From: Paraphysomonas bandaiensis
Taxonomy: Eukaryota; Protista; Chrysophyceae
Assembly (NCBI GenBank): GCA_965644295.1
Contig: CBFFRP010000656.1
Location: forward strand, 1 to 27,545
Reading direction: 5' to 3'
Length of the DNA: 27,545 bases
Below, in pieces: positions 2,281-27,545 of the stretch. Below the pieces are notes generated by a model. That model did no database searches. It was not told the DNA's origin and saw only the letters and a list, made by a program, of their open reading frames with translations. Positions within the stretch are counted from its first letter, which is position 1; every line of letters begins with the position of its first letter. The position numbers were made by a program, and so were the translations under genes.

Positions 2281-2295
2281 TCAATCTCTCCGAGC

Positions 2296-3568: not shown

Positions 3569-3589
3569 ATTTTTTAATTTTTTAATTAT

Positions 3590-3919: not shown

Positions 3920-3951
3920 TAATATATACTATATATTAATTTTTTAAATAA

Positions 3952-4206: not shown

Positions 4207-4255
4207 TAATATATATTTATATATTAATTTTTTAAATAAATTATTTTTTATTTTT

Positions 4256-5851: not shown

Positions 5852-5934
5852 TAATATACAAATATATATTATTTTTTAAATAATAAATTTTTTAATTTTT
5901 TTTTTTTTTAAAAATCTAAAGGTTTTTTATAAAT

Positions 5935-7374: not shown

Positions 7375-8891
7375 TTTTGCTTCAATACATCAGGATGAAG
7401 GAATAGTGTACCAAGATGATGTGGCCATTCATTCCAGGACTTTTAAAGATCACTACAGAACCTTGGGAAAGGTGTTCCGATGTCTGGAAGCAAGAGATCT
7501 GACATTCAAGAGGTCGAAGATGCATATAAACCATCCACGGATCGCTTTCTTAGGATATATCATCGATGAACATGGGAAATACCCGAATCCCGAAGCAGTG
7601 AAAGCGATTAGGGAACTAGCATACCCACAAGATGTGAAGGCTGTGAGATCGTTTATAGGAATGACCATCTACTATCGAAATTTTATAGATGGTTATGCTG
7701 AGATGGTAGCGCCACTACATGAGCTGACGAGAAAAGGGGTAGTGATAACAGAAAGATGGGGAGAGCGTCATGAAAAGGCGGTAGACGAGTTAAAAGAAGC
7801 GTTGACGACTGCGCCCTGCTTGATGTTAGTTGACAACCGAAAACCATTTGAGATCAGAGTAGATGCCTGTAGGAAGGGACATGGAATGGGAGCAGTAATG
7901 CTGCAGCCAGATGAAGAAGAGAATAGACGACCAGTTGGCTATTGGAGTAAAGGATTGACGGCGACGGAGAGAGAATATGCGCCGACGGAGATAGAGTGCA
8001 AGGCATTACATGACTGTTTGATGTACTGGGATGTGTATGTAAGGGGGGCGTTAGAGGTTGATGTGTATACCGATCACAATTGCCTGGTATACATGTACAA
8101 GGGACAAACGGCTTCTAACAATGGAAGGTTGATGAGATATCTACTGGATTTGATGGGTTTAAGTTTTAGACTACACTATAAGCAAGGAACGAAGCATATG
8201 GATGCGGATGCAGTGTCAAGGCTACTACAACGAGGGGAAGAACCAGTATACCTTACTGCTGATGATCTAGAATGGGATAAAGGAACGGTAACAGAGGAAG
8301 ATCTATTGTTGGCTAAAGACTTAGAGATGAAGAGACGTAAGATGATAGAGAGGGCACAGAAGAGAAAAAAGAAGACACCTGAGAGGAGTCAGGATAAAGA
8401 AAAACAAGAGAACAAAGATGAAGAAGAAGTGATCAAGATAATAAATGCACTGACTAGGAGAAGGAATATGGGAAGTAAGATGGAAGGTGAAGAGAATATG
8501 AAGAAGTATTTGAAGAGGTTTGGAAAATCGGATAGAGTGTTGAGACCAAAGAAGAAAGGAATAGAGCCGGTGAGGGAAGCACCACATAGGGCCGATTGGG
8601 AGACGTTGGATAGTCCAGAAGATTTGAGTGATATGAGACGGAAGAGAAAGAAGGGATATAATAGAGTGAAAGTGTTGAAGTCGACAATCGAAGGAGCAGG
8701 CGAAGGACTATTCGCGACGAAGTATATGAAGGAAGGGTCCATAGTGTGTGATTATGAGGGTGAGAGACCATCGCAGGATGAAATAGAAAAAGAAGAGTAT
8801 GATAAGGATTACGTCTTTTCAGTACCTATGGGGGGAGGAGAGTATGCATATATAGACGCTAGAGACAGGAATAGTTGTTATGGGAGGTATT
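7375..8891 (+). pseudogene. pol: Pol A part 1: RT C-half, RNase H, charged linker, SET domain N-part
   Basis: VYQDD, FLGY, VRSFIG; RNase H VDAC/EIEC/YTDH/DADAVSR; SET KSTIEGAGEGLFA, DYEG, YIDA, YGRY. The first ~29 codons of the tracked ORF (7289) come from the transposon end. Confidence 0.9.
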
Positions 8892-9171
8892 AAGTCGATG
8901 GTAAGTAAAAACCTGGTCTAAGTACTAGAATCTGGTCAAACTACTACTTTTGTGTACGAATATGTAAAACGAACATGGAGAACGTGTTGTGATGAGTGCA
9001 TATCGTCTTGGAATCGCTTTGTGTTACTGTGTTGCATTATATTTTAAAAGGATATTTTATTCTGGCCGTATTTCTGAGTACTATAAGTGTAGTTACGTAA
9101 CTACTTATAATCAATAATCATTATTGCTTTTTATAAAAACAAATTACATAATAATATATATATAACATAAT

Positions 9172-9401
9172 ATAACAATTATCACTACCTTCGATTTCTT
9201 TTCCCACTGATAACAACATTAAAATACCATATATAATGTTCCTGTATCTCTCAATTTCTCACTCTCACTGACAATAACCATTTCATAATATATAAACAAT
9301 TATCACTACCTTCGCTTTCTTTTCCCAACGATCACATTACTACCATCTAATGCCCCTGTATCTTTCCATTTCTCACTCTCACTGACAATAACCATTTCAT
9401 A
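9172..9401. repeat. Imperfect ~120-bp tandem duplication downstream of the transposase
   Basis: ACAATTATCACTACCTTCG...CTCACTCTCACTGACAATAACCATTTCATAA occurs twice. Confidence 0.75.
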
Positions 9402-9458
9402 AGTAGGTCGTCGTGTATTCTTTGAAGTTGTTCTGACAGTTTCTAGATTACAAAAAAG

Positions 9459-12400
9459 TTAATTAACACTAATAACTATAACATGCGACGTACCTTTGCA
9501 TGGCTTCAGAAATCGTTGTTTCACTCCTTCGTCTGTTCCATGCAATGCCTGAATGTACTTGATGTCGTAAGTGCCGTTCCTATTTACTGATTGCACAGTG
9601 GCAACTAGCCCATGAGTGGTTCTCACTTTCTGGCCCACTTCAAAACGAAGTTCACTGAAATTTACTCCACCACCATCCTCCAAATATTCAGTCAAGTCAG
9701 TCAAATCGTCTCCACATTCGTCGGAACTGTCATTGCAATCATCAGCAAGAAGTGGTGTAGTAGAGAGCGATTTCTTTGGAACGGTTTTCTTCCTACTGGT
9801 AGTATTCTTTGACTTCCTCACAGATTTTTTTCTAGGAGGACCATCAGGTTGAGCTTTGGCAGTTAGTCCAGCATCAGACACATCATTTCCGTCCACATCT
9901 TCTACAATACGTCTTGCGGGCTGACCTTTCTTATTACCAGAATGTCTTACAGATGAAGTAGATTCCACAACTCTCATTGGAGGAATGGTAGTCCCACACT
10001 TTAATTTCCGACTTACTTTCTCCTTGGGTCCAACTTCATATTCCGAAATAGTAGGACCGTTGAACAAGACATCGAAAAAAGGAATGTGCAATGGATTCTC
10101 TGCAATATAGTCAGTCGCAATATTCGTCTTAGGAGTTACTTCGTCACGCCACTTAATCCAGTCTCTGGCAACAGCGGGGTTTTTATCCTTGTACGTGTTT
10201 ATCATACGGTCGCAGCAATCCGTGATGATCTCACGAGAGCCTTTTATGAAAGGGTCAACAGTTATTTGGTGAGACTTGGGGGGAAGGGACTTCAAAATAA
10301 GCAGAGGCTCCTCAGTGTCGAGCGGACGTTGAGTTACCCTCGTCAACTGCGGAATCAAACCGGTGATGTTCTCTTTCTCTCCAGTCGGGCAAATGACATC
10401 TTTCTTTGGGTCATCAACAATTTCAATAACTTCCTGCTGAGCATATGCCTGGTAAGTGGACTTCACGAAATGCGGATATCTGTCGCCCTCGGTGTCACCT
10501 ACTCGTTCAAATGTAAATTGCAATTGCGTCCAATTGGTTTTGGCAAAATTGGTTCTCACTTTCTGGCCCACTTCAAAACGAAGTTCACTGAAATTTACTC
10601 CACCACCATCCTCCAAATATTCAGTCAAGTCAGTCAAATCGTCTCCACATTCGTCGGAACTGTCATTGCAATCATCAGCAAGAAGTGGTGTAGTAGAGAG
10701 CGATTTCTTTGGAACGGTTTTCTTCCTACTGGTAGTATTCTTTGACTTCCTCACAGATTTTTTTCTAGGAGGACCATCAGGTTGAGCTTTGGCAGTTAGT
10801 CCAGCATCAGACACATCATTTCCGTCCACATCTTCTACAATACGTCTTGCGGGCTGACCTTTCTTATTACCAGAATGTCTTACAGATGAAGTAGATTCCA
10901 CAACTCTCATTGGAGGAATGGTAGTCCCACACTTTAATTTCCGACTTACTTTCTCCTTGGGTCCAACTTCATATTCCGAAACAATTGGTTTTGGCAAAAT
11001 AGCCTAAGCTAAGATCTATGAATGGTGCAACCCAATCAGCATAATTAGGGAATGCAAATACATCAATAACTTTCACATCATCAAACTTTTCAAACGCCAT
11101 CATAATCATTGTCTTAAATTCTGAAGGGGAGTAAACGAACTCATTTCTCAACAAAGTCCACAACAATGCAAATAACGCATCTATATCTTCATGAGTGTGT
11201 CCAGGAAGGAGTCTTGTCAATACCACTTTTGACACCAAACCACACGCAACAAGTAAATAACAGATGGCTAAATATAAGACATTCGCATTCTCAGACCCTC
11301 CATCAATTTGATGAAATATCGTGTTCGGAAGTCTTCCTTCTAGGTATTGCTCTTCCAAACTGAGTAGCCACGTATGGACATAATAGCTAGCATTCACAGA
11401 TACATTTGCAAAACTCCTGTACATTCTGATATTGCGACCATGCATAAGAATACCTTGTAAGTGCTGCTTGATATGCTGAGAAGGCATTCTACTGTGTCCA
11501 AACCAGGGCAAAAGACACCTATTCTGCTGCATACCGTCAGTGATTGTGGACATGTACTTCCATTTCTGATCAAAAGCAAGTTGTCGCCGACTATAGTACG
11601 CTTCGCGTTCCCCCATGTAAGTTAGACGATGCAAAATGAAAAGCATTGTGACTTCTTGCCTCCCACGGGAATCATTAAAGCTTCTTCGCAATTCTGACAA
11701 CGCCGAGCAGAGGTTGCATTTCCCACAACAGTGTTTAAACTTTCGAATTTTGACATGCGGAAAACAGTCTTTCCAAACTTGCAAGAACTGCTTAATCGTC
11801 AAAGGTTTCATAGCACCATCACCGTATGACTCAATATCGTGTTTATATTCATCATAAATTTCCTTCTTAGGTATAGGCTCCAGGTGCAATTCTTCGCAGC
11901 GATTTGGGGGGTTATCACCCACAAGTTTGAAATAGTATCCCATCCATGCACTTGAAGTTAAAGATTGCACCGAATTTGGAAGGCTTGCGCGGCCATACTG
12001 TTGACGGGAGAGGGATATTCCAAAGTGCTGACAGAATTTGCTAAGGTTTTGATCATTTACACCAAGTGTTCTTGTAGATGTCCGATCAATAAAATCCTTG
12101 GCTGTATTTCTCTCTCCTGACTTCAATCGACAGACAAGAGAATCAGTGTACCAATGAGAAATTCTGTACGCTGCTTCAAAAGCTTCACGGCAAATATGAA
12201 CAGCCTCCGGTCCTTCGCCTAATTGATAGTTTATGAAGTACTTATTGGTAAGAGTGACACGCATCGGAAATCCCGCTATTTTGGCAAAGAGAAATTCCTT
12301 CTTCTCAGCTGGTTTCAAACGGGCTAAGTCATTGATACACTTGAAAAAGAGTTTCTTGGCCTCGAATTCGACACCAGGGTTTAAATAACGGTATATCACA

Positions 12401-12477
12401 CACCCTTCACAAGGACATGATATAACACAAACAAGGCAGCAACAAGCTTGAGTGTGAGTTTTCAGCATTGGCTTCAT
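9459..12477 (-). pseudogene. DDE transposase with C-terminal Tudor-like domain, frameshifted by a 451-bp internal insertion
   Basis: CGKCNLC, ITDGMQQ, QIDGGSEN, LPGHTHEDIDALF. The two tracked ORFs join as ...GYFAKTNWTQLQF... once the insertion is removed. A possible splice acceptor near 12488 suggests an upstream exon. Sola assignment is from motif recall. Confidence 0.8.
10550..10981. repeat. 432-bp copy of 9617-10048, flanked by a 19-bp direct repeat
   Basis: CAATTGGTTTTGGCAAAAT at 10531-10549 and 10982-11000. Confidence 0.92.
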
Positions 12478-12645
12478 TTGAAGTATTCTGAAGCAAAAAA
12501 AAATATCATCATCCAAAAAAATGACAGTGTGCAATCATATAAAATCATATATATCAGCACTGAAATATATACAGTTTACTGTATGATGAACAATCACATA
12601 ATATAATAATATGCATGTATAAAAACACAATACATTCTGCCACTC

Positions 12646-12861
12646 AGTCACTTCGTAGCGAGCCGTCGCTCAGCCCGGAAGGTATTCCTTGTTTGAAATG
12701 TATGTATCTTTATTAAAATCACTTAATCATGATATATAGTCACTTCGTAGCGAGTGCGCCGCTCAGCCCGGAAGGTATTCCAATTCATGTTTGGTAAGTG
12801 ATGCAAACAGCTTCTTGTGTGTGAGTTATTGCCGTCATAGCGAGCTGCCGCTCAGCCCCGA
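12646..12861. repeat. ~43-bp GC-rich motif, two copies plus a partial, in the transposon intergenic region
   Basis: AGTCACTTCGTAGCGAG...CGCTCAGCCCGGAAGGTATTCC at 12646 and 12738, partial at ~12838. Confidence 0.75.
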
Positions 12862-13324
12862 CAGACAATATCAACGCAACACAAGCGCATGTCATCGTAT
12901 ATAATATACATATATAATAATATAATACTCTAGCAGCAACTAAACGAACCTTGAAATGAAACACACTCCCAAATCTCAATTGTTCTATAACTATTCAACA
13001 GAGTAAACCAGAGTAATATACATGCGCCATTGCTTGCTATTATTATTATGTATGAACAATCCGCTTGTCATGCATGCGTCTGTCTTTCAAAATAAACTCA
13101 CGCACCCTCATTTCAAAAATAGATACGGTGTTGTGCGTATACGTGTATACCTATACTATATACCGGCATAGTGTTCGCAAAAATATCTTTTTTATGCATT
13201 TGAAATGTGTGCAGCAGTATGACTACATATCTATCTGATGTAATTTTAAAATAAATATATACTTAATTTGGTTAAACCAAGACTTGTTATAAGAGAGAAG
13301 TATATATAAATATTGTCAACAACA

Positions 13325-14861
13325 ATGGAGGATGGGTTGACGAATTTTGCTTTTGATTCTGATGACGATAACTCCGACGAACGAATACAACTTATTACAT
13401 ATGTGCAATGTGTAAAGCAACGTTTAATTCAAATGAAAAAGGGGTTTCCATTTTGAAGTTGCAATGTGTTAGTTGTTGCAGGAAGTCTAGATTAGATATG
13501 CTTGCTGCACTTGGTGAATCCGAAGTTGATGATAATTCTGAACTGCTTGATGAGAGTGCTGTGCCACAAGAAAGTGGTTCCAGTATTTTGTCACCAGAGA
13601 GAGGCAACAAAGACGAAGAGGGTAATGAGATGGGAAGCATCCTGCACCAGTTTAATTGCAATGAGGACTCCTTCACAGTTAACATTGGTGGTTACAACCA
13701 AACATACTGCCGCAAGAAGTTCATTTCAGATGGTGGTTCTTCTGTAAAGTGTTTCTTGGATTTGGAAATGCTATCGATGATCCCTTTATTGTTCAATTAC
13801 TATGTACTTTCAGCTGTACTTGGCAAAGACGGTTCATATGTTAACTATTCTCGCTGTTGGGTGAGTAAAAACTCTGATGGAAAACAATACGTTGTTCTCT
13901 GTTACCTTCGGACCAAATGTAACAAATGGCGCTGTGACAGTGTTCTGTATGATCCCACTGAAAGTGGAAAAATTTTTCTGCTTACAGGTTTATCAAAAAT
14001 GAAGCAGTACACTTTCCTTCCCGAAGTATCTCTCGACCATGACTGGGCGAAGTCAATTTTGGAAACCTATCTCCGCGACCCAAAGAACAAACTTGCATGG
14101 GACCCACAAGGAGATGTTCCGAACAAGGATGAGACGGGAAACTGGATTCTTGATGGCTGGGATCCTGTAGAAGAAGGGTTGAAAGCAGCATTTGATCTCA
14201 GCAGCAAGAAGAGGCTTAGAAAGCGAAAGGCCTCTGTTCGATTTGCGGATGAAAATTTCAGTTCTGGCACTGGCAAGAAACCGAGAAAAAAGCAAACAAA
14301 CCAAGTCAGCGTGCTGTTGCGGTACGTATATACAACTGAATTAATTTTGTTATAACTGACCATAAAATATCTTGTGTAATACAGAAGAAGGCTGTTAGTG
14401 CAGTTGCTGCAACGGAAAATGATGAGAGAGATCGTGGCGAAGATGATCCTGTTATCATTGTCAAGCCAGCAGAGCCAAAGCGTCAACATCAAGCAAGAAA
14501 CACTCTTCCAAAGAAACCAGATATTCAAGAAGAATTGGAGGCCCAGAAACGGCGAACTGCTGAATTGGAGCAGTTGCTGATGAGTAAGACTCAGCCAACG
14601 AAAGCTTCTGCCCCTGCTGCTGTTGTGGGTGATAACTCTTTGTCTACGCAGACTACTGAAGTTCATCAGCGGACACCCTCTGCTGTAGGTCACAGTTACG
14701 AAATGACTCAACCGCCAATTTCTCTTCATGCGATGAATGCGATTAGATATGTTGAAAATGTAAAATTTGCAGATGCATTGCGCATGGCAGATCAGAATGC
14801 CTACTTGCAGCGGGAAAATATTATTTTGAAACAGTCAATGTTTGGTAGTGGCAATCAGTAA
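13325..14861 (+). pseudogene. Second, divergently transcribed transposon gene of unknown function (CxxC..CxxC N-terminus, one intron, two apparent frameshifts)
   Basis: ATG at 13325 (MEDGLTNFAFDSDDD), main ORF 13408-14321, GTACGT...CAG intron 14322-14384, open exon 14385-14861. Frameshifts are needed near 13380 and in the A-run near 14290. Confidence 0.55.
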
Positions 14862-15048
14862 GTAGTAGTAGTGATGTAACGATTTCGTAGTGACATAATC
14901 TTATTATAATATAATAAATGTTTAGAATTAGTCCAATTATCGTGTTATTTGCTAGTATATACCAGACTTTCTCAAATATACCCTATATATATAGTACACA
15001 TCACCTGGTCAAAGTACTTGACCAGGTTTTTACCTACCATCGACTTAT

Positions 15049-18405: not shown

Positions 18406-18408
18406 ACC

Positions 18409-19091: not shown

Positions 19092-19099
19092 GGGGGAAG

Positions 19100-19792: not shown

Positions 19793-21186
19793 TGTACACA
19801 AACCAGACTTGCTGGTTTGCTCCCAACAAAATGTATAATAAGGTATGAGTAAACACTTATTATTACTGTTAAATCACCTAACACGGCCAACGATATCCGC
19901 TAGATAACGCCGCGCAGTATTCCCTCTAAGAATAAAGGTCGCTGTTAAGACAGTGTCAAGTAACTTAAACAATGACATGCAAGGAATAACATATAGAATG
20001 GTACGCATCTACAGAATGAACCAAGTTCATTTTATATCACACACACCACACCGCATGCATTCTTGCATACACCGTGTATACCACACGTATTATGACAATA
20101 AAACAAAACTGAATAACAGCGTATGAAACTGAATAACTGCGCATAAAACTGAAATAAAACAATAGTGATAAAACTGAAAAACCGCTTATCTAAATAAGTA
20201 CTAGAGTACCGTATACTCTGTACTCGAGTATGTGCTATAAGACTTGTGCAATTCAAGACATAGACATTCCACTTTGCCCAAAGCTTACGGGTCTGCAAAA
20301 CACATGCCCAGACGTAGCTCACGCTTGGCAACTAAGACCCCGCTTGCTAAAGGTGCTTTTCCAAGCCTGCCAGTCTTTATACCGAGCTCAGAAACATGCT
20401 GTAAGTCTAAGTCTAAGCCTGGCAAGGTACGTAGGGGTCAACCTTCCCTGAAGGCTAGGAATCATGCACGCATACAGGCTTACAATGCTATGGCCATTGA
20501 ATTGGATCTTGAAGCGCTTTTGTCTCGGTGTCCAGAAGGCAACGCTAAAGGTGTAGTCTCAGTACCTTTCTGCCACACGTCTAATCCTGCTTCGTCGACT
20601 GAAGTGTGTCCCTTTTTCCTGGATTGGCATGCTGAACATGCTAATTCTGATAACCCCTTTGTCCACGTGATATCCGGTCCTAATGTTGCTAACCCTGATG
20701 GCTCTGGTTCCGAGAAGGGAGTGGGGGCTTCTATTGCTCTCGCTCCTAGTGATACTGTGCCTGTATGTTTCTATGTGGGTGAGTTGTATACTTGTGCTCG
20801 TAGACCTCCTCGTGGTCGTTATACTCTTGAGGTAGCACCTGGCAGTGGTATCTTTATTGATGCTGAATACGATTCCCGTGATCCTGCGTACCATATGTTC
20901 CATGCACCCACTGAATATATGCGTGTGCCTCCTAATTATGCTCGCTATATCAATACTCTTAGCGAGGAGGATTTGGCCGCGGGAAGGCAATTCAACTGCC
21001 GTTTTGCCGGTTGTCCCTGCGGTCATAATTGTATTGCTGTTTTTGTTACTCGCAATATAGCTGTTAATGAAGAATTGTTGATTCCGTATCCCTTGTTGCG
21101 TTGACTCTCAGTAATTAATTTCATTGTCTTTTAATGCCTTGTACTACTTGTTCTTAGAAGCTACTCTATAAACCCCTAGGGTTACA
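19793..21186 (-). repeat. 3' LTR of element B (1394 bp, TGTAAC...TGTACA on minus strand)
   Basis: PPT GGGGGGAAGAGGTAG (21187-21201, minus strand) abuts 21186; 19793-20176 matches 27162-27545. Confidence 0.9.
20304..21104 (+). CDS. SET-domain protein encoded inside the LTR, antisense to gag-pol
   Basis: EKGVGA, FYVGE, FIDA, YARYINT...NC, VTRNIAVNEELLIPY; basic N-terminus. First ATG is at 20304 (tracked start 20244 is TTG). Confidence 0.8.
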   Translation: MPRRSSRLATKTPLAKGAFPSLPVFIPSSETCCKSKSKPGKVRRGQPSLKARNHARIQAYNAMAIELDLEALLSRCPEGNAKGVVSVPFCHTSNPASSTEVCPFFLDWHAEHANSDNPFVHVISGPNVANPDGSGSEKGVGASIALAPSDTVPVCFYVGELYTCARRPPRGRYTLEVAPGSGIFIDAEYDSRDPAYHMFHAPTEYMRVPPNYARYINTLSEEDLAAGRQFNCRFAGCPCGHNCIAVFVTRNIAVNEELLIPYPLLR

Positions 21187-21246
21187 CTACCTCTTCCCCC
21201 CTTTTTTTTTTTTTTTTTTTTTTTTCGAAATAGAATAAAAGTGAAG

Positions 21247-24200
21247 TCAAACTTGATGCTGTTTGACCTGGGGAAAACGTAGCGCAAAGTCGGAATCTAC
21301 CAGTACCATGGTTGTCGGATCGAAGTCGCGGTGTACAAAACATTTCACGTGATAGTTATCAAATCTGTATGTGGCTTTGGTCATGGGATTCTTGACAGAA
21401 ATTAGCTTCTTGCTGGTTTTATGATACCAGTGAGTAAGCATAAATTGCATCACATATGTAACAGTGGGCGAATCTGGTAGTTGTAGGGCATCATACCAGT
21501 CATCTCCGAATACTCTGATATCTACATACACCTCGTCACCCGGTTGAACCGTAGTTATTGACTGCTTCCTCTTCTCACTGATATATTTGGCGGCCCCATC
21601 CGTGGTATAAATAAGATGATGTAGATAAGGCTTGCTGCTACAGAATTCCTCATAGGCTATGGAATCAAATAAATCCTGGCTGTAAGGTAGCTCTCGGATA
21701 TCTCCATCCTTGAAACGTACTGTAAACAACATTGTTGAACGCCGTTCCCTGTCTCCAGTGTAATATAAAATAGTGTCGATCTCATGCTGATCATGATCTC
21801 GCATAGCCATTTTATAGGCTTGTTCCCTGTCTCCGGGATATAATTTTACATCCCGTACGTCTACTTTTGTTACAACTCCGGTCACCAAATGTTTGCAGTC
21901 AATATCATTCTTATATTGCGATATAACCTGAAATGGTCCTAGGTATCTATGAGACATTTTAGGGTAAACCTTGGCCCCTTTGTCAAATAAAACAAAGTCG
22001 CCCGGCTGATACTGATTCTGTCGCTGAGGAGATATGCCTTTACTGAAACGTTTGGCCTTCAACTTATCTTGATATTCTCTCGAACTGCGTTGCAACAGAG
22101 CTAGATTATCATTGAGTTTATGTAGTCTGGCATGGGCTTTCTCTGGTACTTCATCCCTTCCCATATTGTTATACCTCTCACTCTCAGAACCAAATGTTAA
22201 CTCAAAAGGCGAATGTCCCGTTTCAGATGATACTTCAGAATTCAATACATGTGCCACTGTAGGAATCCAGCTGGGGTCTTCAAATACATCTCGCTTCTCT
22301 TCTTTCTCACTGTAATCGAATACTAATGCTCTTAAATGCCGCACTACCTCTCCTATGATCCTCTCGCATCCATTGGCATGTCTATCCGCTATGCTGAATG
22401 TGTGTTTGACACCAATATATGAGCAAAGTTGGTCAAATAATTGGGATTTTAGATCAGGTCCTTGATCCGATATGATCACATCAGTATGACCAAATTGACT
22501 CCAATACTTCCATACAGTATTAGCAAGGTTTATGGCAGTGACTCCCTTCACTGGTTCGAGGAAGACATGTTTTGTAAACAGATTTACCACCACGTTAATA
22601 TGCGTGTAGCCTTCTTTACCGTGGGGTGTAATTTCCACTGCATCGATACCGATGGCACTACGAGCTGAAGGTGGTTTTAAACTGCGAGGTATAGCTATCA
22701 AAGCTTCTTGCATTCCGAGTCGTGTCTTAGCACAGTTGGGACATTTATTGATCATCTCGGTGACTTCTTCAAAAGATATCCTGTGTCCCGGGCATTTCTT
22801 ATTCAATTTTACCCACGTGGCATAAGCTCCTTTGTGACCTTGTCTGGCATTATGAACTGCTTGAAAACATTCCTCTTTGGATAAATACAACGGTTCCAAC
22901 TCTTCTTCCTTGTCATCCGGATCCATAAAATTGTTAAGATAGATGTCTAAGTTGCCAAACATAGTTTCATCAATGTATTCCTCAATGTCCATATCAGGAA
23001 ATATACCAGCCAAATGTTGCAACTTATGTGCTCTGGAGAGCCAATCTGCTAACCAATTTTGAGAACCTGGAATGTGCCGAATCATAAAGTTAAACGATTG
23101 CAGGTATATACGCCATCTCACAATTTTCGGTACTTCAGATGCCTCCATCCACACTAAATTGTTATGATCGGTCTCAATAATAAACTCCTTGCCCACTAAA
23201 TAATATGCGAGGTTTCTGACAGCATAATAGATACCGTAGCCTTCCTGCTCTATCGTAGCCCATCGTTGTGCTTGCGTTGAGAATTTTTTCGATATAAATG
23301 CTATTGGTTGTAACTGAACAGTACCATCCTCTAAAATTTTCTTCTGTAATAATACTGCTCCTACTCCTAGCTCGCTAGCATCAGTTCTTAGGATCCATTC
23401 TAACGAATAGTCGGGATAAAATAACTCACAGGCATCTTGTAGACCCTTTATGAATCTTCGATACTCCTCTTCATAATCATGCTTCCATGTAGATTTATCC
23501 CAGTTGAAAGTTTTCTTGGTCATGTCCGGAAGATGACCTACCAAGTCAGAATATCTAGGTGTGAACCCTGAGAAGAAAACTCCTTTTCCTAGTAAGCTTC
23601 TGGCCGTCTTAGTACTCGTAGGCATTGGAATGTTAGCCAAAGCTTCCTTCTTATCAGGACTGACCTCATACGATTTGTGTCTGCACACGTAGCCAAAGAA
23701 ATTCACTTCCCGGAATCCCAGCCAACTCTTAGGCATTTTGAGTTTTACATTACGTTCAATACACCGGTCAATTATCATTTCGAACTTCTTATAGGCGTCT
23801 GTGGCATCCTCCGCTAAGATTAACATATTATCAAAAATTACGATGGCCCAGTCGCTGAAGTCCGAAAACAAATCTCTTACAACTTCTTGAAGAATTCCAG
23901 TGGCAGGTGCGATGCCTTCAGGCATAAACTTCGGAGCGAACTGTCCCCATGGTGTTTGAATAGATAATCTCTCCGATGTTTCTTCATGCAATGCTACTTG
24001 ATGGAACGCATTTGTTAAATCAATATCCATGTATAACGGGAAATTTGTAATCTTTTGAATTTCATGTCGCACATTTGGGATTGTGTGGTTGCCAACTTCC
24101 ATATGCTTGTTTATCTGGACGTAGTCCCCACAGAATCTTATGTAGGGTGGCGTAGCCTTTGGTGCAACTACTAAACATGATGCCCATGGCGATCTACTTT

Positions 24201-25254
24201 TACCATAGAAATAACCACATAGTCTATGAAATTCCTTCTCCGACGCTTCCCAGAGTTTCGGATTGATAGGTCTCGCCTTCGGCTTCATACGTTCCGGTAA
24301 ACTCTCTTTCCATTTTAAACGTAACGGCTCTATTCCTTTTATACCGCTCCATTCCTCTGGAACAAAAACTTTCTCCGCTTTACCTTTTAATAACGCTACT
24401 ATATCCGTGTTTGTCCTAAGTTCCTCACTGACATGTTTGTCAATAAGGTCGTGATAATCCTGCACGGCTTCTTGCCGTGGCTTTCCCAAAAACGTTAACG
24501 CATCTCCAAAGTTCACCGGCAATTCTACTTCAGCTTCTTCAGGTGCTTCATCATCATTCGATTTTAACCATGGTTTAACCAAACTACCTTTTGTGACAGA
24601 ATTTAATCTCCTCTGTTCAAGATCATTCGTATTTTGCATCTCATCTATCTGGTTCAGCTCCACTTCATAACCACCACTATCCTTTAGCTCCTGATTGGCT
24701 TCTCTGAGCATCTGATCCATGAATGGGTATAATTTTCCTGTGAGAGCAGGTAAACCTAATATAATATCCTGACTCTTCATGTCTAAGACGAAAAATTCAC
24801 CAGTGTAAGTATGGGTCCTGGCTCTCTTGTCTTCAACTTTCAAATTTAACTTCACTGCCTCCTTCAAAGGTTTCACTGTTCGACTGTCCGCCAATATGAC
24901 TCTGCACTTGGTCTTCATAATATCTTTGTCATCTAATCTACTTCGTATTCTTTTGATTAAATCCGCACTAACATAATTTGCTGACAAGGCTCCAGTATCA
25001 CATAATATATATACTAATTCTTCAATGTCCATTTTTCTGTCTAGCACTACTCTTCCTACCGTGTGACTACTGGATAGAATTTTCTTATCTGGATAACTGG
25101 CGTATAAAACTGAAAACCTATTGTCTTCTTGCTTCAGTCTACGTAAATCAAAATCCTGTGAAAGCGTTCTCCTCTTATCATCTTCACTCTCGCAAGATTC
25201 TTCATGCTCGACTTTTTGCCTACTATGTACATATTCAGTGTCTCTACTTCCTAG
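21247..25254 (-). CDS. pol: Pol B: protease, RT, RNase H, integrase, chromodomain-like C-terminus
   Basis: CDTGA; IDLTNAFHQ, MPEG, VIFDN; TDAS/EQEG/TDH/ADWLSR; H..GH..CPNC; GIDA, SDQG, CER; YLGPF. The frame is open up to the gag stop. Confidence 0.93.
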   Translation of the reverse strand, partial: LGSRDTEYVHSRQKVEHEESCESEDDKRRTLSQDFDLRRLKQEDNRFSVLYASYPDKKILSSSHTVGRVVLDRKMDIEELVYILCDTGALSANYVSADLIKRIRSRLDDKDIMKTKCRVILADSRTVKPLKEAVKLNLKVEDKRARTHTYTGEFFVLDMKSQDIILGLPALTGKLYPFMDQMLREANQELKDSGGYEVELNQIDEMQNTNDLEQRRLNSVTKGSLVKPWLKSNDDEAPEEAEVELPVNFGDALTFLGKPRQEAVQDYHDLIDKHVSEELRTNTDIVALLKGKAEKVFVPEEWSGIKGIEPLRLKWKESLPERMKPKARPINPKLWEASEKEFHRLCGYFYGKSRSPWASCLVVAPKATPPYIRFCGDYVQINKHMEVGNHTIPNVRHEIQKITNFPLYMDIDLTNAFHQVALHEETSERLSIQTPWGQFAPKFMPEGIAPATGILQEVVRDLFSDFSDWAIVIFDNMLILAEDATDAYKKFEMIIDRCIERNVKLKMPKSWLGFREVNFFGYVCRHKSYEVSPDKKEALANIPMPTSTKTARSLLGKGVFFSGFTPRYSDLVGHLPDMTKKTFNWDKSTWKHDYEEEYRRFIKGLQDACELFYPDYSLEWILRTDASELGVGAVLLQKKILEDGTVQLQPIAFISKKFSTQAQRWATIEQEGYGIYYAVRNLAYYLVGKEFIIETDHNNLVWMEASEVPKIVRWRIYLQSFNFMIRHIPGSQNWLADWLSRAHKLQHLAGIFPDMDIEEYIDETMFGNLDIYLNNFMDPDDKEEELEPLYLSKEECFQAVHNARQGHKGAYATWVKLNKKCPGHRISFEEVTEMINKCPNCAKTRLGMQEALIAIPRSLKPPSARSAIGIDAVEITPHGKEGYTHINVVVNLFTKHVFLEPVKGVTAINLANTVWKYWSQFGHTDVIISDQGPDLKSQLFDQLCSYIGVKHTFSIADRHANGCERIIGEVVRHLRALVFDYSEKEEKRDVFEDPSWIPTVAHVLNSEVSSETGHSPFELTFGSESERYNNMGRDEVPEKAHARLHKLNDNLALLQRSSREYQDKLKAKRFSKGISPQRQNQYQPGDFVLFDKGAKVYPKMSHRYLGPFQVISQYKNDIDCKHLVTGVVTKVDVRDVKLYPGDREQAYKMAMRDHDQHEIDTILYYTGDRERRSTMLFTVRFKDGDIRELPYSQDLFDSIAYEEFCSSKPYLHHLIYTTDGAAKYISEKRKQSITTVQPGDEVYVDIRVFGDDWYDALQLPDSPTVTYVMQFMLTHWYHKTSKKLISVKNPMTKATYRFDNYHVKCFVHRDFDPTTMVLVDSDFALRFPQVKQHQV

Positions 25255-26904
25255 TCAAGCTCGAGTACCCGAGGGTTCTCTTCGCATGATGGAAGTTTGG
25301 GACGCAGCACCTGAGTCCGAGGTGCCTTGAACAAATTTATCAATCTTTAATTTCATTTCCTTGGCTGCTTTAACCAATTCTGGACCATGGTGCAAATACT
25401 TGCAGTTGTCTCTCTTGCAAGTTCCCGTGAGTATCTTCTGTAAGCATCCATACTTCTTGTCCGAGTTGGTAGGTGGTCCCACCGCATGTAGATGTTCAGG
25501 AATCTCATCTTCCTCCTCATCTGACTCATTTAGATCAATACTCAAAGAAGCATCTGGTTTTAAATCCGCAGAAATTGCCACGGTAGGTGCTGCTGGTTCT
25601 GGTAAATAATTCCTCCAGTCATCTTCTTCAACTGGTGATTGCTCCGCATCACTATCTGGAACTTCATACGCTCCTTCCTCGATGGCATTCAGAGGTTTCA
25701 AGACGCGTGGTTTTGAAAATATCTTCTTCTCATTTGCCTTTTTTTCTCTGTAGACTCTCAACCTCTCCTTGTGTTCGGTTAAACATTTGTAGGGGATTTC
25801 CTTAACGGCTACACTCAACTGATACTCATCAGAAATAATTTCGGTGTACTGATCAAAGAATTCCTGCATGTTCTTAAACTTAGTTTCTGTCATGCAACTC
25901 CATACATGTTCGAAGTACTCTGCATCATTACACGTTTTGAAAAGCCGAATAAGTCCTCCTGGCTTGTCATCAATTCTCGGGCACCAGTCCTTGTTGCCCT
26001 CCAACATAATGTTAAGCATTCTTCCGAACTCCGATATCAATTTTAGCTGTTGATGGTAGAATGTCTCGTGGTTCACGGGAGACACAACAGCCCATCCCAT
26101 GACTCTGGAATGTCGTAGGGCTTCCTCTAATTCCTTGTAAAACGCTGGTCTAGAAAACACTTTGGTCTCGTTGGCTATCACTCTAATAAGATCTGTAATA
26201 CCAAGCGATCCCAGTTGTCCCTGCGTCAACTGGTATTTGGAACGCAGGTGCTCCTTGCATGCTTGAGAGAGAATTTTCTGAACTCTGACTTTCGTGTTCT
26301 CTTCTTCCTGAAAATTCATGATTGCTTTGATAGCTTTCGTCACCTTCGATAGCTGGAAACTATCTATTCTGACATTGCACTCCTTAGCCTGTCGCATCAC
26401 CACTTCTCCACTCGAGGCTACCTGTCTCTCGCTGCTGGCAATCTCTCTGAATATAGAACCTTTGACTGACTTTACATCGAATGGATCTGATTCATCGTTG
26501 GTTGAAGTTCGCGTTGGAATGATTGCGTCGATAGACTGCCTTCTAGACGCCTGAGCAATCTCATGTAACACGGAAGGTCTACCCTTCTTTTGCTTCTCAG
26601 CAGGTCCTTGTTTCGGCTTTGCCTCTTCTACGGCTTCTTCCTGGCTAAGTTCACTGGCAGGTGCTGGTGAATTTCTAGGAGGAGATGGTTCCGGAAATGA
26701 ATAAGTCCCTTCCAGGACAGCTACTCTTACTCTCAATTCCTTGAGCTCATCGCTGACCTCAGCTACGTCGTGCTTGAGCCCAGCTACATCATCTTTTACC
26801 CCAGCTACTGTCTCAGTTAGAGTATTTACAGCACCCGTTATTTGCTCTACGAATCCCTGCATTAGACGCTGCAGGTCTGTGGCTTCGTCTTGATTGACAT
26901 CCAT
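25255..26904 (-). CDS. gag: Gag-like protein with N-terminal coiled coil and CCCH-type zinc finger
   Basis: Position directly upstream of pol; C-x8-C-x4-C-x3-H (CLQKILTGTCKRDNCKYLH). Confidence 0.82.
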   Translation of the reverse strand: MDVNQDEATDLQRLMQGFVEQITGAVNTLTETVAGVKDDVAGLKHDVAEVSDELKELRVRVAVLEGTYSFPEPSPPRNSPAPASELSQEEAVEEAKPKQGPAEKQKKGRPSVLHEIAQASRRQSIDAIIPTRTSTNDESDPFDVKSVKGSIFREIASSERQVASSGEVVMRQAKECNVRIDSFQLSKVTKAIKAIMNFQEEENTKVRVQKILSQACKEHLRSKYQLTQGQLGSLGITDLIRVIANETKVFSRPAFYKELEEALRHSRVMGWAVVSPVNHETFYHQQLKLISEFGRMLNIMLEGNKDWCPRIDDKPGGLIRLFKTCNDAEYFEHVWSCMTETKFKNMQEFFDQYTEIISDEYQLSVAVKEIPYKCLTEHKERLRVYREKKANEKKIFSKPRVLKPLNAIEEGAYEVPDSDAEQSPVEEDDWRNYLPEPAAPTVAISADLKPDASLSIDLNESDEEEDEIPEHLHAVGPPTNSDKKYGCLQKILTGTCKRDNCKYLHHGPELVKAAKEMKLKIDKFVQGTSDSGAASQTSIMRREPSGTRA

Positions 26905-27161
26905 TACTGTCTATATGCTAAGACAATTGTATCTTACTATCAGACTAGCTACTGGTGGTTGTCTTTGTCCTATGTGAATGCTAAGCTCTCTGTAACAAAT
27001 CTACTGTCTTGACGTGCTTGTCCGCAGGCACAGTACAAGATGAGATATTGTTGCTTCAAACTTCGCTCCCACAATGGTCAATGACTTCCAATGTAGATGA
27101 TAATTTTCTATTACACTACTACGCAATATAAAAGGCCTTGTGGGACTAAAAGTAATATTAC

Positions 27162-27545
27162 TGTACACAAACCAGACTTGCTGGTTTGCTCCCAACAAAA
27201 TGTATAATAAGGTATGAGTAAACACTTATTATTACTGTTAAATCACCTAACACGGCCAACGATATCCGCTAGATAACGCCGCGCAGTATTCCCTCTAAGA
27301 ATAAAGGTCGCTGTTAAGACAGTGTCAAGTAACTTAAACAATGACATGCAAGGAATAACATATAGAATGGTACGCATCTACAGAATGAACCAAGTTCATT
27401 TTATATCACACACACCACACCGCATGCATTCTTGCATACACCGTGTATACCACACGTATTATGACAATAAAACAAAACTGAATAACAGCGTATGAAACTG
27501 AATAACTGCGCATAAAACTGAAATAAAACAATAGTGATAAAACTG
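27162..27545 (-). repeat. 5' LTR of element B (partial, runs out of the window)
   Basis: 384 bp with no differences seen against 19793-20176. Confidence 0.93.

What the first reader, a model, noticed from the sequence alone, without database searches (positions are those of the whole stretch)
7375..27545. Two distinct SET-carrying retrotransposons nested in each other: possible retrotransposon chromatin-writer system
Seen: elements A (YQDD RT, SET in Pol) and B (IFDN RT, SET in LTR) are clearly different families with dissimilar SET sequences, and B is inserted into the LTR of A. B also has a chromodomain-like IN tail and the DNA transposon has a Tudor-like tail. Inference: independent SET captures point to selection for writing histone marks (anti-silencing or self-regulation) in this host, possibly paired with reader-guided targeting that builds TE nests. 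I do not know of a description of this, but cannot check the literature.
Basis: inference. Interest (0 to 1): 0.8.

Follow-up and report, generated by a model that had tools for sequence, protein, structure and literature searches.

The report
Retrotransposons carrying their own SET methyltransferases
Two unrelated jumping-gene lineages in this marine protist genome (probably Paraphysomonas) each carry a SET-type lysine methyltransferase, one fused into the polymerase gene and one as a backwards-facing gene inside the terminal repeat, so these elements probably bring their own chromatin-marking enzyme, though no activity has been shown.

Summary
The core observation holds. Element A (Ty3/gypsy, YQDD RT) has a SET domain in-frame between RNase H and integrase. 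Element B (a distant gypsy lineage, IFDN RT) has an intact 266-aa SET gene lying antisense wholly inside its 1,394-bp LTR.

Three details fail. B is not inserted in A's LTR: it starts 135 bp after that LTR ends. The chromodomain-like and Tudor-like tails are weak leads only. The real nesting is two DNA transposons inside A, one of which splits its SET.

Both SET types are multi-family, multi-copy and selected:
- A-type passes Pfam SET in three families.
- B-type has dN/dS 0.08-0.14 between families and gives a confident SET-fold model.
- The same antisense arrangement recurs in marine metagenome elements whose pol is only 60-71% identical.
- B-type SETs also sit beside Helitron genes, and A-like SETs precede the endonuclease in at least 37 LINE copies here.

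Separate acquisitions are supported by architecture and by profile scores. A SET tree cannot formally exclude a shared source (AU p 0.375). Histone writing and any anti-silencing role remain inference.

The scan had already noted both architectures on other DNA of this genome. TE-SET fusions are only listed generically in the literature, and I found no description of an LTR-borne antisense SET gene.

The parts
7376..8891 (+). Element A, left piece: end of RT (YQDD), RNase H, linker and the N-terminal half of the SET domain (about 8636-8891). The copy is 5'-truncated, with no gag, protease or 5' LTR.
   Evidence: Pfam RT_RNaseH_2 at 3e-26, RVT_1, and SET N-half at 18.3 bits. 99.3% DNA identity to the intact paralogue L037. 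SET query residues 1-88 map to 8636-8899.
8892..15045 (-). A 6.15-kb TIR DNA transposon inserted in A's SET domain. The transposase ORF 10969-12534 carries DUF7869. ORF 9459-10997 contains an exact 432-bp internal duplication and a small beta-barrel-like tail.
   Evidence: Breakpoints come from alignment to L037, with a 3-4 bp duplicated target and ~26-bp inverted termini read from the sequence. DUF7869 at 4.9e-23. Duplication 9617-10048 = 10550-10981. The tail has only SH3-like leads.
15046..16374 (+). Element A, middle piece: C-terminal half of SET (about 15046-15243), a conserved ~80-aa module of unknown fold, the integrase zinc finger and the start of the rve core.
   Evidence: 98.9% identity to L037. 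Pfam Integrase_H2C2 and rve. SET query residues 84-150 map to 15043-15243.
16375..18405 (.). A 2-kb non-autonomous TIR element with internal tandem repeats, inserted in A's integrase.
   Evidence: Breakpoints from alignment to L037, with ~24-bp inverted termini read from the sequence. Repeat families at 17191-17966.
18406..19099 (+). Element A, right piece: integrase C-terminus (SH3_Tf2-1-like), stop codon at 19010-19012, and polypurine tract at 19090-19099.
   Evidence: 97.5% identity to L037. Pfam SH3_Tf2-1 and rve_3. Sequence read.
19100..19657 (+). 3' LTR of element A (558 bp, TG..CA).
   Evidence: The A-family LTR copies elsewhere in the genome start near here and align no further than 19657. 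Termini read.
19658..19792 (.). A 135-bp spacer between A's LTR and B. It shows that B is adjacent to A, not inside A's LTR.
   Evidence: No A-family copy extends into it. Sequence read.
19793..21186 (-). 3' LTR of element B (1,394 bp). The terminal 394 bp (19793-20186) are shared with higher-copy LTR variants. The rest is a 1-kb cassette holding the SET gene.
   Evidence: 100% repeat of 19792-20176 at 27161-27545. TG..CA ends and adjacent PPT. Loose ends at 19792/19793 and 20186, with a depth step, in public runs.
20304..21104 (+). B-type SET gene, antisense inside the LTR: 266 aa from the first ATG, with a basic N-terminus, a long helix, a conserved N-terminal extension and a SET core (RYINT; EELLxxY).
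   Evidence: ORF. Pfam SET 19.6 bits here and 29-31 bits in sister families. The 75%-identical homologue P0001 starts at the same ATG. dN/dS 0.14 against L052. AF2 pLDDT 87.5 with Foldseek hits to SET7/9, LegAS4 and G9a at prob 1.0.
21189..21226 (-). Polypurine tract of B (a run of A, then GGGGGGAAGAGG on the - strand), immediately upstream of the 3' LTR.
   Evidence: Sequence read.
21247..25254 (-). B pol: protease (DTG), RT with IFDN, RNase H, integrase and a conserved C-terminal tail. It is in frame with gag behind a single TGA.
   Evidence: Pfam RVT_1, RT_RNaseH and rve. One in-frame stop across 1,885 codons. IFDN is invariant in the lineage.
25255..26904 (-). B gag (549 aa, CCCH zinc-finger-like motif).
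   Evidence: ORF and a weak zf-CCCH hit. 99% aa identity to the gag on metagenome contig L052.
27162..27545 (-). 5' LTR of B, cut by the contig end after 384 bp. Its SET cassette is therefore not assembled here.
   Evidence: The window is the whole contig C656. The relative L052 shows the SET ORF in the 5' LTR position.

Best explanation
The window is a transposon-rich contig of a chrysophyte-like protist, probably Paraphysomonas. It holds members of two distant Ty3/gypsy lineages that each acquired a SET-domain lysine methyltransferase and kept it under selection.

In lineage A the SET is a domain of the Pol polyprotein, between RNase H and integrase. It is therefore made with every round of Pol translation. 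Inference: it travels with, or fused to, integrase to the new insertion site.

In lineage B the SET is a separate small protein with a basic, nuclear-localisation-like N-terminus. It is encoded antisense in the U3-like part of the LTR, so every full element carries two copies and every solo LTR one. Inference: it is transcribed divergently from the LTR and acts in trans.

The function I think most likely is methylation of histone lysines, or of another chromatin protein, to shift local or global chromatin in the elements' favour, that is, counter-silencing.

Shown: the architecture, homology, fold, copy number, selection, and recurrence outside this genome.
Inferred: catalysis, substrate, direction of the effect, and the antisense promoter.

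The window's A copy is dead: it is 5'-truncated and hit by two DNA transposons. The B copy looks young and intact.
For: ARCHITECTURE.
-, as detailed under parts.

A-TYPE SET.
- It passes the Pfam cut-off in three families (44.1, 51.4, 31.0 bits).
- Those families are only 36-58% identical in Pol and have long intact ORFs in many copies.
- A profile hits EHMT2 at 1.5e-12 and EZH2 at 1e-10.
- The GAGxGLFA motif, the Asn of RYxND and the C-terminal Tyr are invariant.
- The same RT-RH-SET-IN domain set occurs in external proteins P0003 and P0004.

B-TYPE SET.
- The ORF lies inside both LTRs of complete elements (C599, C70, C338).
- pN is far below pS between families: dN/dS 0.14, 0.08, 0.08. Recent copies give about 1.
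- The model has pLDDT 87.5 and matches solved SET enzymes.
- There are 89 cluster representatives at E<=1e-10.
- Marine metagenome elements L053 and L054, with pol 71% and 60% identical to B, keep the antisense SET between the gag start and the pol end.
- A Paraphysomonas transcriptome peptide is 98% identical.

SEPARATE ACQUISITIONS.
- The positions and strands differ.
- B-type has a conserved N-terminal extension that A lacks.
- Reciprocal profile scores are 0.5-17 bits, while each profile scores other SETs at 41-97 bits.
- The careful ML tree separates {A + ND-type SETs} from {B family} with 100/99 support. A interrupts the ND-type group in all 200 bootstrap trees.

TRANS ACTION OF THE B-TYPE SET.
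- Elements with 99%-identical pol and 100%-identical LTRs carry only half of the SET ORF (C645, C153). This is what one expects if a diffusible product can be supplied by relatives.
Against: - No enzymatic, substrate or chromatin data exist.
- Both SET types lack the His of the canonical NH(S/C) motif (A has ND, B has NT/NS). B's GxG motif is degenerate, and the window's B copy scores below the Pfam cut-off (19.6 against 22.4). Pseudo-enzymes cannot be excluded.
- The truncated-SET elements with identical LTRs show that the SET is not needed in cis.
- Expression evidence is unstranded. The transcriptome peptide could be read from the sense genomic RNA's complement, and read laying gave only contigs.
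- No conserved TATA-like element was found upstream of the ORF.
- The AU test does not reject A and B SETs forming one clade relative to the sampled ND-type SETs (p 0.375).
- The outgroup sample was drawn from hits to the B profile and is not a balanced sample of SET families.
Confidence: 0.5

Rival explanations
1. Writer-reader self-targeting. The SETs deposit a repressive mark such as H3K9me on or near the elements. Reader domains in integrase or transposase then steer new insertions to marked DNA, so that nests of transposons build up and genes are spared.
For: - The A-type profile's best solved relatives are the H3K9 methyltransferases EHMT2 and EHMT1.
- The contig is a dense TE nest.
- B's Pol tail resembles Chromo clusters in ESM Atlas at 0.82.
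- A conserved ~80-aa module lies between SET and integrase in lineage A.
Against: - Neither reader domain is confirmed. Pfam and PDB profile searches are blank for B's tail and for the A module. The DNA-transposon tail gives only generic SH3-like leads.
- B is not inserted in A's LTR.
- The nearest solved relative of a SET domain does not predict its substrate lysine.
- A small repeat-only contig says nothing about insertion preference.
Confidence: 0.15
2. The SET domains do not act on chromatin marks. Either they methylate a non-histone substrate (the element's own Gag or integrase, or a host restriction factor), or they are catalytically dead peptide-binding modules that tether integrase or a small adaptor protein to histone tails.
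For: - The canonical His of the NHxC motif is absent in both types, and GxG is degenerate in B.
- In A the SET sits next to integrase, where targeting domains of other elements sit.
- Many SET enzymes have non-histone substrates (general knowledge).
- Among B's closest solved matches is SET7/9, which also methylates non-histone proteins such as TAF10, ER and Dnmt1, as the titles of those PDB entries show.
Against: - The SAM-pocket Asn and the catalytic Tyr are invariant in both families over deep divergence. A pure binding module would not need them.
- LegAS4, the best sequence match of B-type, also lacks the His and is an active histone methyltransferase (general knowledge, not tested here).
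Confidence: 0.2
3. Single origin. One SET was captured once by a transposable element and later moved between TE lineages (gypsy Pol, gypsy LTR, LINE, Helitron). On this view A and B are not independent captures from the host.
For: - The AU test does not reject A plus the B family as one clade (p 0.375).
- Both lack the His of NHxC and share the R(Y/F)xN core.
- hhalign aligns the two profiles at 96% probability.
- Both types recur in other TE classes: LINEs for A-like SETs and Helitron neighbourhoods for B-type. SETs therefore do circulate among TEs.
Against: - The ML tree and all 200 bootstrap trees keep A inside ND-type SETs, apart from the B family. The split has 100/99 support.
- Reciprocal profile scores are near noise.
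- The B-specific N-terminal extension is absent from A.
- Even a shared source would still need separate insertion events into Pol and into the LTR.
Confidence: 0.25
4. Passenger DNA. The SET sequences are captured host gene pieces with no role for the elements, and the LTR ORF is open by chance or through constraint on the overlapping sense-strand LTR signals.
For: - Truncated SET ORFs persist in apparently young elements (C645, C153).
- The window's B copy scores below the Pfam cut-off.
Against: - dN/dS is 0.08-0.14 over about 190-266 codons between families.
- The ORF is retained in elements whose pol is only 60-71% identical.
- The SET-fold model is confident.
- The A-type SET is retained in-frame in three families 36-58% identical in Pol.
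Confidence: 0.05

Closest known systems
DNMT-carrying retrotransposons of dinoflagellates and charophytes (de Mendoza et al. 2018, PMC5890265) and the MBD-carrying Copia of arthropods (de Mendoza et al. 2019, PMC6673714)
   Same: Autonomous retrotransposons that took up a host-type epigenetic writer or reader domain in their coding region and kept it in many copies. Acquisition was recurrent and independent across lineages.
   Different: There the cargo is a DNA cytosine methyltransferase or a methyl-CpG binding domain. Here it is a SET lysine methyltransferase, and in lineage B it is a separate antisense gene in the LTR rather than a polyprotein domain.
The catalogue of chromatin-domain/TE fusions in Grau-Bove et al. 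2022 (10.1101/2021.11.30.470311)
   Same: It reports 823 gene models with both chromatin and TE domains and names SET methyltransferases among the fused classes. It proposes evasion of host suppression.
   Different: SET cases are only counted, and SETMAR is the one named example. No RH-SET-IN gypsy architecture and no LTR-borne SET gene is described in the text I read. An unfused antisense ORF would not be found by a fusion screen.
SET gene carried by the proto-Helentron of Phytophthora infestans (Thomas et al. 2014, PMC4067079)
   Same: A small stand-alone SET protein of about 153 aa encoded as an accessory gene of a mobile element in a stramenopile. It parallels the B-type SET found next to Helitron Rep/PIF1 genes in L055-L058.
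   Different: The carrier is a rolling-circle DNA transposon, not an LTR. That SET is described as Clr4-like. I did not compare its sequence with B-type.
Chromoviruses (Ty3/gypsy elements with a chromodomain at the integrase C-terminus, e.g. MAGGY), as cited in Grau-Bove et al. 2022
   Same: Gypsy elements that carry a chromatin module next to integrase.
   Different: That module is a reader, not a writer. A chromodomain in B's tail could not be confirmed here.
Viral and bacterial exported SET enzymes: vSET of chlorella virus PBCV-1 (PDB 1n3j, a hit) and Legionella LegAS4/RomA (PDB 5czy and 8sr6, best sequence hits of B-type)
   Same: Minimal SET proteins encoded by a genetic parasite and used on host chromatin. 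LegAS4 also lacks the His of the NHxC motif in the alignment.
   Different: Those are encoded by a virus and a bacterium, not by retrotransposons. Similarity to B-type is marginal (E about 1e-3 by sequence).
Genes encoded in or from retroviral LTRs: MMTV sag (ORF in U3) and HTLV-1 HBZ (antisense from the 3' LTR). From my own knowledge, not checked in the library.
   Same: An accessory protein is encoded within the LTR (sag) or transcribed antisense from the 3' LTR (HBZ).
   Different: sag is on the sense strand. Neither is an enzyme. Both are vertebrate retroviruses.

Membership tests
SET-domain lysine methyltransferases (Pfam PF00856) | Sequence match to the SET profile above the curated cut-off (22.4 bits) | tested here: met
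   A-type scores 44.1, 51.4 and 31.0 bits in intact copies of three families. The window's split halves score only 18.3. B-type scores 30.8, 29.9 and 29.1 bits in sister families. The window's own B copy scores 19.6, below the cut-off, but aligns to the sisters at E about 1e-32.
SET-domain lysine methyltransferases (Pfam PF00856) | SET fold | tested here: met
   The AF2 model of the window's B-type protein has mean pLDDT 87.5 and pTM 0.78. Foldseek against the PDB gives SET7/9, LegAS4, G9a, MLL1, SETD8 and ATXR5 at probability 1.0 over about 150 residues. A-type was not folded, but its profile hits EHMT2 at 1.5e-12.
SET-domain lysine methyltransferases (Pfam PF00856) | Cofactor and catalytic motifs: GxG, NH(S/C)xxPN, ELxF/YDY with the catalytic Tyr | tested here: inconclusive
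   A has GAGxGLFA, R(Y/F)xNDP (Asn kept, His replaced by Asp) and E(I/V)xxSY (Tyr kept). B has KG(L/V)xA (weak GxG), R(Y/F)(I/V)N(T/S) (Asn kept, His replaced by Thr or Ser) and EELLxDY, which is EELLIPY in the window (Tyr kept). Neither has a post-SET Cys cluster.
SET-domain lysine methyltransferases (Pfam PF00856) | SAM-dependent lysine methylation | not testable with these tools
   This needs recombinant protein and a methyltransferase assay.
Ty3/gypsy LTR retrotransposons | Pol domain order PR-RT-RNase H-IN, with gag upstream | tested here: met
   A shows RT-RH-(SET)-IN. The window copy lacks gag, PR and the start of RT. B shows gag, TGA, then PR(DTG)-RT-RH-IN.
Ty3/gypsy LTR retrotransposons | Direct LTRs with TG..CA ends, and a polypurine tract before the 3' LTR | tested here: met
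   For B, 19792-20176 equals 27161-27545 at 100%, with the termini and PPT read. For A only the 3' LTR (19100-19657) is present, bounded by genome-wide copies and a PPT.
Ty3/gypsy LTR retrotransposons | RT motif C YxDD | tested here: not met
   A has YQDD. All nine B-lineage Pols examined, including the metagenome relatives, have IFDN with Asn in place of the second Asp. B is still filed as gypsy-like on domain order and Pfam matches. The deviation is reported as an oddity.
Chromoviruses | Chromodomain at the C-terminus of integrase | tested here: inconclusive
   Pfam gives no Chromo hit at E<=1 on B's last 217 aa. A five-sequence profile finds no PDB chromodomain at E<=10. ESM Atlas features point to Chromo clusters at 0.82, below the tool's trust level. 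I do not file B as a chromovirus.
Retrotransposons with a captured epigenetic-modifier domain (de Mendoza 2018 type) | Modifier domain in-frame in the polyprotein of an autonomous element, in several intact copies | tested here: met
   In lineage A, at least 8 copies of A3 have 1,526-aa open frames. A2 has frames of 1,947-2,252 aa. A1 is intact in C654 and C75.
LTR-encoded accessory genes | Complete ORF within LTR boundaries, present in both LTRs | tested here: met
   In the window the ORF (20304-21104) lies inside the LTR (19793-21186). Both-LTR copies are seen in C599, C70 and C338. The 5'-LTR position is seen in L052 and L053 and the 3'-LTR position in L054.
LTR-encoded accessory genes | Own transcript, here antisense to the element | not testable with these tools
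   Only unstranded evidence exists: a 98%-identical peptide in a Paraphysomonas transcriptome, and contigs of runs that may be RNA.

The most novel reading that the evidence does not exclude
The LTR-borne SET is a trans-acting chromatin effector expressed divergently from the LTR promoter. It would be made by full elements and solo LTRs alike, and shared as a 'public good' among transposons of marine protists: gypsy LTRs, Helitrons and, with a second SET type, LINEs and gypsy Pol. It would rewrite a host silencing mark. The truncated-SET elements would be cheaters that rely on it. That would be a transposon-encoded counter-defence against histone-based silencing, maintained across TE classes.
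Probability: 0.3. Interest if true: 0.85.

Novelty: new variant of a known kind. Interest (0 to 1): 0.66.

Why it matters
Transposons are usually pictured as targets of histone methylation, not as sources of the enzymes. Three TE classes in one small protist genome carry SET domains: gypsy Pol, gypsy LTR and LINE. Related marine elements carry them too, including next to Helitron genes, and at least half of the genome's Pfam-SET matches lie in TEs. If the enzymes are active, this extends the DNMT and MBD captures described by de Mendoza and colleagues to histone-lysine writers.

It would also give a tractable system for asking whether mobile elements manipulate the histone code. The B-type protein is small (about 240-270 aa) and soluble-looking, and could be expressed and assayed directly.

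The LTR-embedded antisense gene is also a new way of packaging cargo. It is duplicated at every insertion and survives as a gene in solo LTRs. This matters for genome annotation, because such SET genes would be counted as host chromatin genes.

Tried and rejected
- A first AF2 run on a 7-sequence alignment gave pLDDT 36 and was discarded. A 72-sequence alignment was needed.
- A quick ML tree plus AU test gave p 0.79, with the constrained tree scoring better than the free one. The quick search was inadequate, so I repeated it with the careful search. The result is still inconclusive for one versus two sources.
- My 'generic SET' outgroup turned out to consist mostly of ND-type SETs that resemble A. 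It is not a balanced outgroup.
- Read laying returned only assembled contigs. It gave no strand, starts or ends, so antisense transcription could not be tested. The two small GT..AG joints in pol came from one contig each with short sides, and I ignored them.
- A search for a conserved TATA-like element upstream of the SET ATG in eight elements found none.
- I first suspected that C206 was the missing continuation of the window's 5' LTR. I rejected this because C206 is 97-98% identical and runs on into pol before another TE interrupts it.
The LINE-type SET copies and host SET genes of this genome could therefore not be fetched, and the LINE association rests on coordinates only.
- PHROGs gave nothing for the capsid-like ORF of the neighbouring virus-like element.
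A's intact SET was read from a natural paralogue.

Full report
WHAT THE WINDOW IS

The window is the whole of contig C656 of a 62.6-Mb, 669-contig assembly. A peptide from the MMETSP1103 transcriptome (taxid 36769, genus Paraphysomonas, a chrysophyte) is 98% identical to the B SET ORF. The genome is therefore probably a Paraphysomonas or a close relative.

The contig is almost entirely mobile DNA:
- a low-GC polinton-like or virophage-like element at 43-7134, outside the finding;
- element A, from about 7376 to 19657;
- a 135-bp spacer;
- element B, from 19793 to the contig end.

ELEMENT A

The open frame from 7289 shows the end of an RT (YQDD), RNase H and the first half of a SET domain. The frame 15073-16452 shows the second half of SET followed by the integrase zinc finger and core. 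The frame 18389-19012 shows the integrase C-terminus.

Alignment to a 97-99% identical paralogue on C654 (L037) gives three collinear blocks: 7376-8891, 15046-16374 and 18406-19657. Two insertions therefore interrupt A:
- A 6.15-kb TIR DNA transposon with a DUF7869 transposase (8892-15045) sits exactly inside SET.
- A 2-kb TIR element full of tandem repeats (16375-18405) sits inside integrase.

In L037 the SET is uninterrupted and scores 44.1 bits against Pfam SET, cut-off 22.4. Two further families with the same RT-RH-SET-IN order score 51.4 and 31.0 bits. They are only 58% and 36% identical to A in Pol.

The 36% family (A3) has at least eight copies with intact 1,526-aa frames. A six-sequence profile of this SET type finds EHMT2 (1.5e-12), EZH2, EHMT1, NSD/SETD2 and KMT2 among solved structures.

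The motif GAGxGLFA, the Asn of R(Y/F)xNDP and the C-terminal Tyr are invariant. The canonical His is replaced by Asp.

A's 3' LTR is 19100-19657. A polypurine tract (AGGGGGGAAG) abuts it, it begins TG and ends CA, and the A-family LTR copies elsewhere in the genome align no further than 19657. The window copy is 5'-truncated and dead.

ELEMENT B

B lies on the minus strand as one 1,885-codon frame with a single TGA between gag (549 aa) and pol (1,335 aa). Pol contains a DTG protease, RT, RNase H and integrase.

The stretch 19792-20176 is repeated at 100% at 27161-27545, where the contig ends. A long purine run (a run of A, then GGGGGGAAGAGG on the minus strand) at 21189-21226 is followed by TG. 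The other end of the LTR reads ...CA at 19793. The LTR is therefore 19793-21186, or 1,394 bp.

Contigs of public runs break away from the window at 19792/19793, as expected for other insertions of the same LTR. They also break at 20186, which divides a high-copy terminal 394 bp from a low-copy 1-kb cassette.

The cassette holds the ORF 20244-21104 on the plus strand, antisense to gag-pol. A 75%-identical homologue from a metagenome (P0001) begins at the ATG corresponding to 20304.

THE LTR ORF IS A REAL SET GENE

- Sister families in the same genome carry a homologous ORF in both LTRs of complete elements. Examples are C599 (LTR 1,430 bp, ORFs of 241 and 266 aa), C70 (245 aa in each LTR position) and C338.
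- These sisters pass the Pfam SET cut-off at 29-31 bits. The window copy itself scores only 19.6.
- Between families, non-synonymous change is far below synonymous change. Window against L052 gives pN 0.157, pS 0.612 and dN/dS 0.14. C599 against C338 gives 0.08. Recently diverged copies give about 1, the usual post-insertion decay.
- An exhaustive profile search found 281 cluster representatives at E<=1e-3 and 89 at E<=1e-10. Nearly all of the 150 listed are small proteins of about 60-470 aa, with one of 887 aa.
- With 72 of these as an alignment, AlphaFold gave pLDDT 87.5 and pTM 0.78 for the window protein. Foldseek matched SET7/9, LegAS4, G9a, MLL1, SETD8 and ATXR5 at probability 1.0.
- The family signature is a basic N-terminus, a long helix, a conserved extension (RCP...NxANP), then KGLFA, R(Y/F)(I/V)N(T/S), NCxF and EELLxDY.

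THE SAME ARRANGEMENT OUTSIDE THIS GENOME

- Contig L052 carries a gag 99% identical in protein to B's. Upstream of it is a 5' LTR whose SET part is only 77% identical in DNA. The SET ORF therefore sits in the 5' LTR too, and LTR cassettes have been exchanged between close relatives.
- L053 (a Tara Oceans marine metagenome) and L054 are elements assembled as collapsed circles. Their Pol is 71% and 60% identical to B. The SET gene lies on the opposite strand between the start of gag and the end of pol.
- A more distant member of the family (P0017, E 1.5e-32) lies in four metagenome contigs in conserved synteny, about 1.2 kb downstream of Helitron-like Rep and PIF1 helicase genes.

GENOME-WIDE PICTURE

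A six-frame scan with Pfam SET gives 136 matches. By coordinates they include:
- 14 in the A-type gypsy families;
- at least 7 in B-lineage LTRs;
- about 48 in a group of 315-nt hits inside open frames of 800-3,700 aa.

For 37 of that last group, an APE-type endonuclease (PF03372) match lies about 200 nt downstream on the same strand and in the same frame. Examples are C644 (7658-7972 then 8171-8899) and C440 (9648-9962 then 8739-9452, minus strand). These are non-LTR (LINE) elements with a SET ahead of the endonuclease.

The A-type SET finds these LINE SETs at 24-33% identity, but not the B-type. At least half of this genome's recognisable SET domains therefore lie in transposable elements.

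ONE CAPTURE OR TWO?

The two SETs occupy different places (in-frame in Pol, or an antisense ORF in U3). They sit in lineages whose Pol is 23-26% identical, and only B has the N-terminal extension. That requires at least two insertion events.

On sequence the evidence is mixed:
- Each profile scores the other type at 0.5-17 bits, while scoring many other SETs at 41-97 bits.
- hhalign relates the two profiles at 96% probability, as expected for any two SET families.
- A careful ML tree of 63 domains separates {A plus ND-type SETs} from {B family} with 100/99 support. A interrupts the ND-type group in all 200 bootstrap trees.
- However, the AU test does not reject a tree that holds A and the B family together (delta lnL 5.9, p 0.375).
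- My outgroup consisted mainly of ND-type proteins resembling A.

My reading is that separate acquisition events are well supported, and separate source genes are likely but not demonstrated.

WHAT DOES NOT HOLD

- B is not in A's LTR. It is 135 bp beyond it.
- The contig ends inside B's 5' LTR, so B's target-site duplication and far flank cannot be seen.
- The 'chromodomain-like' tail of B is conserved across the lineage. Pfam gives no hit, a PDB profile search gives none, and ESM Atlas gives only a 0.82 lead.
- The 'Tudor-like' tail of the DNA transposon gives only SH3-like-barrel leads.

HOW IT MOST LIKELY WORKS

Shown: two TE lineages maintain SET genes under selection.

Inferred for lineage A: the SET is translated as part of Pol. 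Unless it is cleaved off, it accompanies integrase into the nucleus, which places a methyltransferase at the pre-integration complex or the new insertion.

Inferred for lineage B: the cassette sits in the part of the LTR that is copied from the 3' end of the genomic RNA, so it is inherited at every cycle and doubled in the provirus. Its orientation suggests divergent transcription from the LTR. Its basic N-terminus suggests a nuclear protein acting in trans.

Elements with Pol 99% identical to C70 and 100%-identical LTRs carry only the N- or C-terminal half of the ORF (C153, C645). The SET is therefore dispensable in cis, which fits a diffusible product that relatives can supply.

I favour chromatin manipulation in the elements' interest (counter-silencing). 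It is the simplest common benefit for Pol-fused, LTR-borne, LINE-borne and Helitron-linked SETs. It also parallels the DNMT and MBD captures (PMC5890265, PMC6673714) and the exported SET enzymes of a chlorella virus and Legionella. Catalysis, substrate and direction of effect are untested, and both types lack the canonical His.

COMPARISON WITH WHAT IS KNOWN, AND NOVELTY

- Grau-Bove et al. 2022 count SET methyltransferases among 823 TE-chromatin fusion models, but describe only SETMAR.
- Thomas et al. 2014 describe a 153-aa SET gene in a Phytophthora proto-Helentron.
- De Mendoza et al. describe DNMT and MBD captures.
- Six further full-text searches found no description of a SET domain between RNase H and integrase of a gypsy element, or of a SET gene inside an LTR.
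- The scan itself had already noted both architectures at several other places in this genome, and the LINE association too.

I class the finding as a new variant of a known kind: retrotransposons that capture epigenetic machinery. The LTR-embedded antisense gene is its most original feature.

VERDICT

The biology is interesting and testable, at 0.66.

Noticed in passing
window 43-7134: A low-GC (26-32%) polinton-like or virophage-like element. It has an rve integrase (1387-2280 +), a D5/primase-helicase (4580-5851 -; DUF5906, PHROG DNA primase at 8e-23) and a 399-aa ORF (5935-7134 -) that looks capsid-like to the eye but has no Pfam or PHROG hit. Another first-reader note covers it.
   Followed up: partly
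window 23830-23841 (- strand) and all B-lineage Pols (L040, L042, L046, L047, L053, L054): RT motif C reads IFDN instead of YxDD, with Asn in place of the second catalytic Asp. It is invariant in nine Pols, including metagenome relatives only 60-71% identical and copies with 100%-identical LTRs. An apparently active RT lineage therefore has a non-canonical motif.
   Followed up: partly
L055 10001-10714, L056, L057 and L058 (marine metagenome contigs): A B-type small SET protein (P0017, 237 aa) lies about 1.2 kb downstream of DUF6570, Helitron_like_N and PIF1 helicase genes. The gene order is the same in four contigs, suggesting a Helitron that carries this SET family.
   Followed up: partly
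G000, e.g. C644:7658-7972 then 8171-8899; C440:9648-9962 then 8739-9452 (-); C433, C426, C143 and about 32 more: At least 37 loci have a SET domain about 200 nt upstream of an APE endonuclease in the same long open frame (up to 3,731 aa). These are LINE-type elements with an N-terminal SET. C644 and C566 have a second SET match further upstream. Sequences could not be fetched.
   Followed up: partly
L042/L043 (C645) LTRs 1731-2790 and 9283-10342; L051 (C153) LTRs 1094-2150 and 8644-9701: Elements whose Pol is 99% identical to C70 have LTRs about 350 bp shorter that keep only the C-terminal half (C645) or the N-terminal half (C153) of the SET ORF. Their LTR pairs are nevertheless 100% and 99.7% identical, so these are young deletion derivatives.
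   Followed up: partly
L037:4455-4700 (-), L038:4627-4872 (-), L039:6714-6959 (+), P0003:880-965; in the window about 15400-15650: A conserved ~80-aa module (LQYLVGRKFIDDENGxLYEV...GYRRSLTG...YDD) lies between SET and integrase in all A-lineage families. It has no Pfam or PDB sequence match.
   Followed up: partly
window 19793-20186 versus 20187-21186; C206:1; window end: B's LTR is a mosaic. The terminal 394 bp are high-copy in read-derived contigs and shared with other LTR variants. The SET cassette is low-copy. Assembly breaks coincide with this boundary: contig C206 starts at the equivalent of 20187, and the window ends at the equivalent of 20176. L052 pairs a 99%-identical gag with a 77%-identical SET cassette, which suggests cassette exchange.
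   Followed up: partly
window 9617-10048 and 10550-10981: An exact 432-bp direct duplication lies inside the second ORF of the DUF7869 DNA transposon. It duplicates a 144-aa segment of the protein.
   Followed up: no
L040/L041 (C70:1-14740): A tandem LTR-internal-LTR-internal-LTR array of a B-lineage element. The second unit lacks about 1.7 kb at the gag end.
   Followed up: no
window 25255-25257 (- strand): gag and pol of B are in the same frame, separated by a single TGA. C70-type elements show the same arrangement. This implies stop-codon read-through rather than frameshifting.
   Followed up: partly
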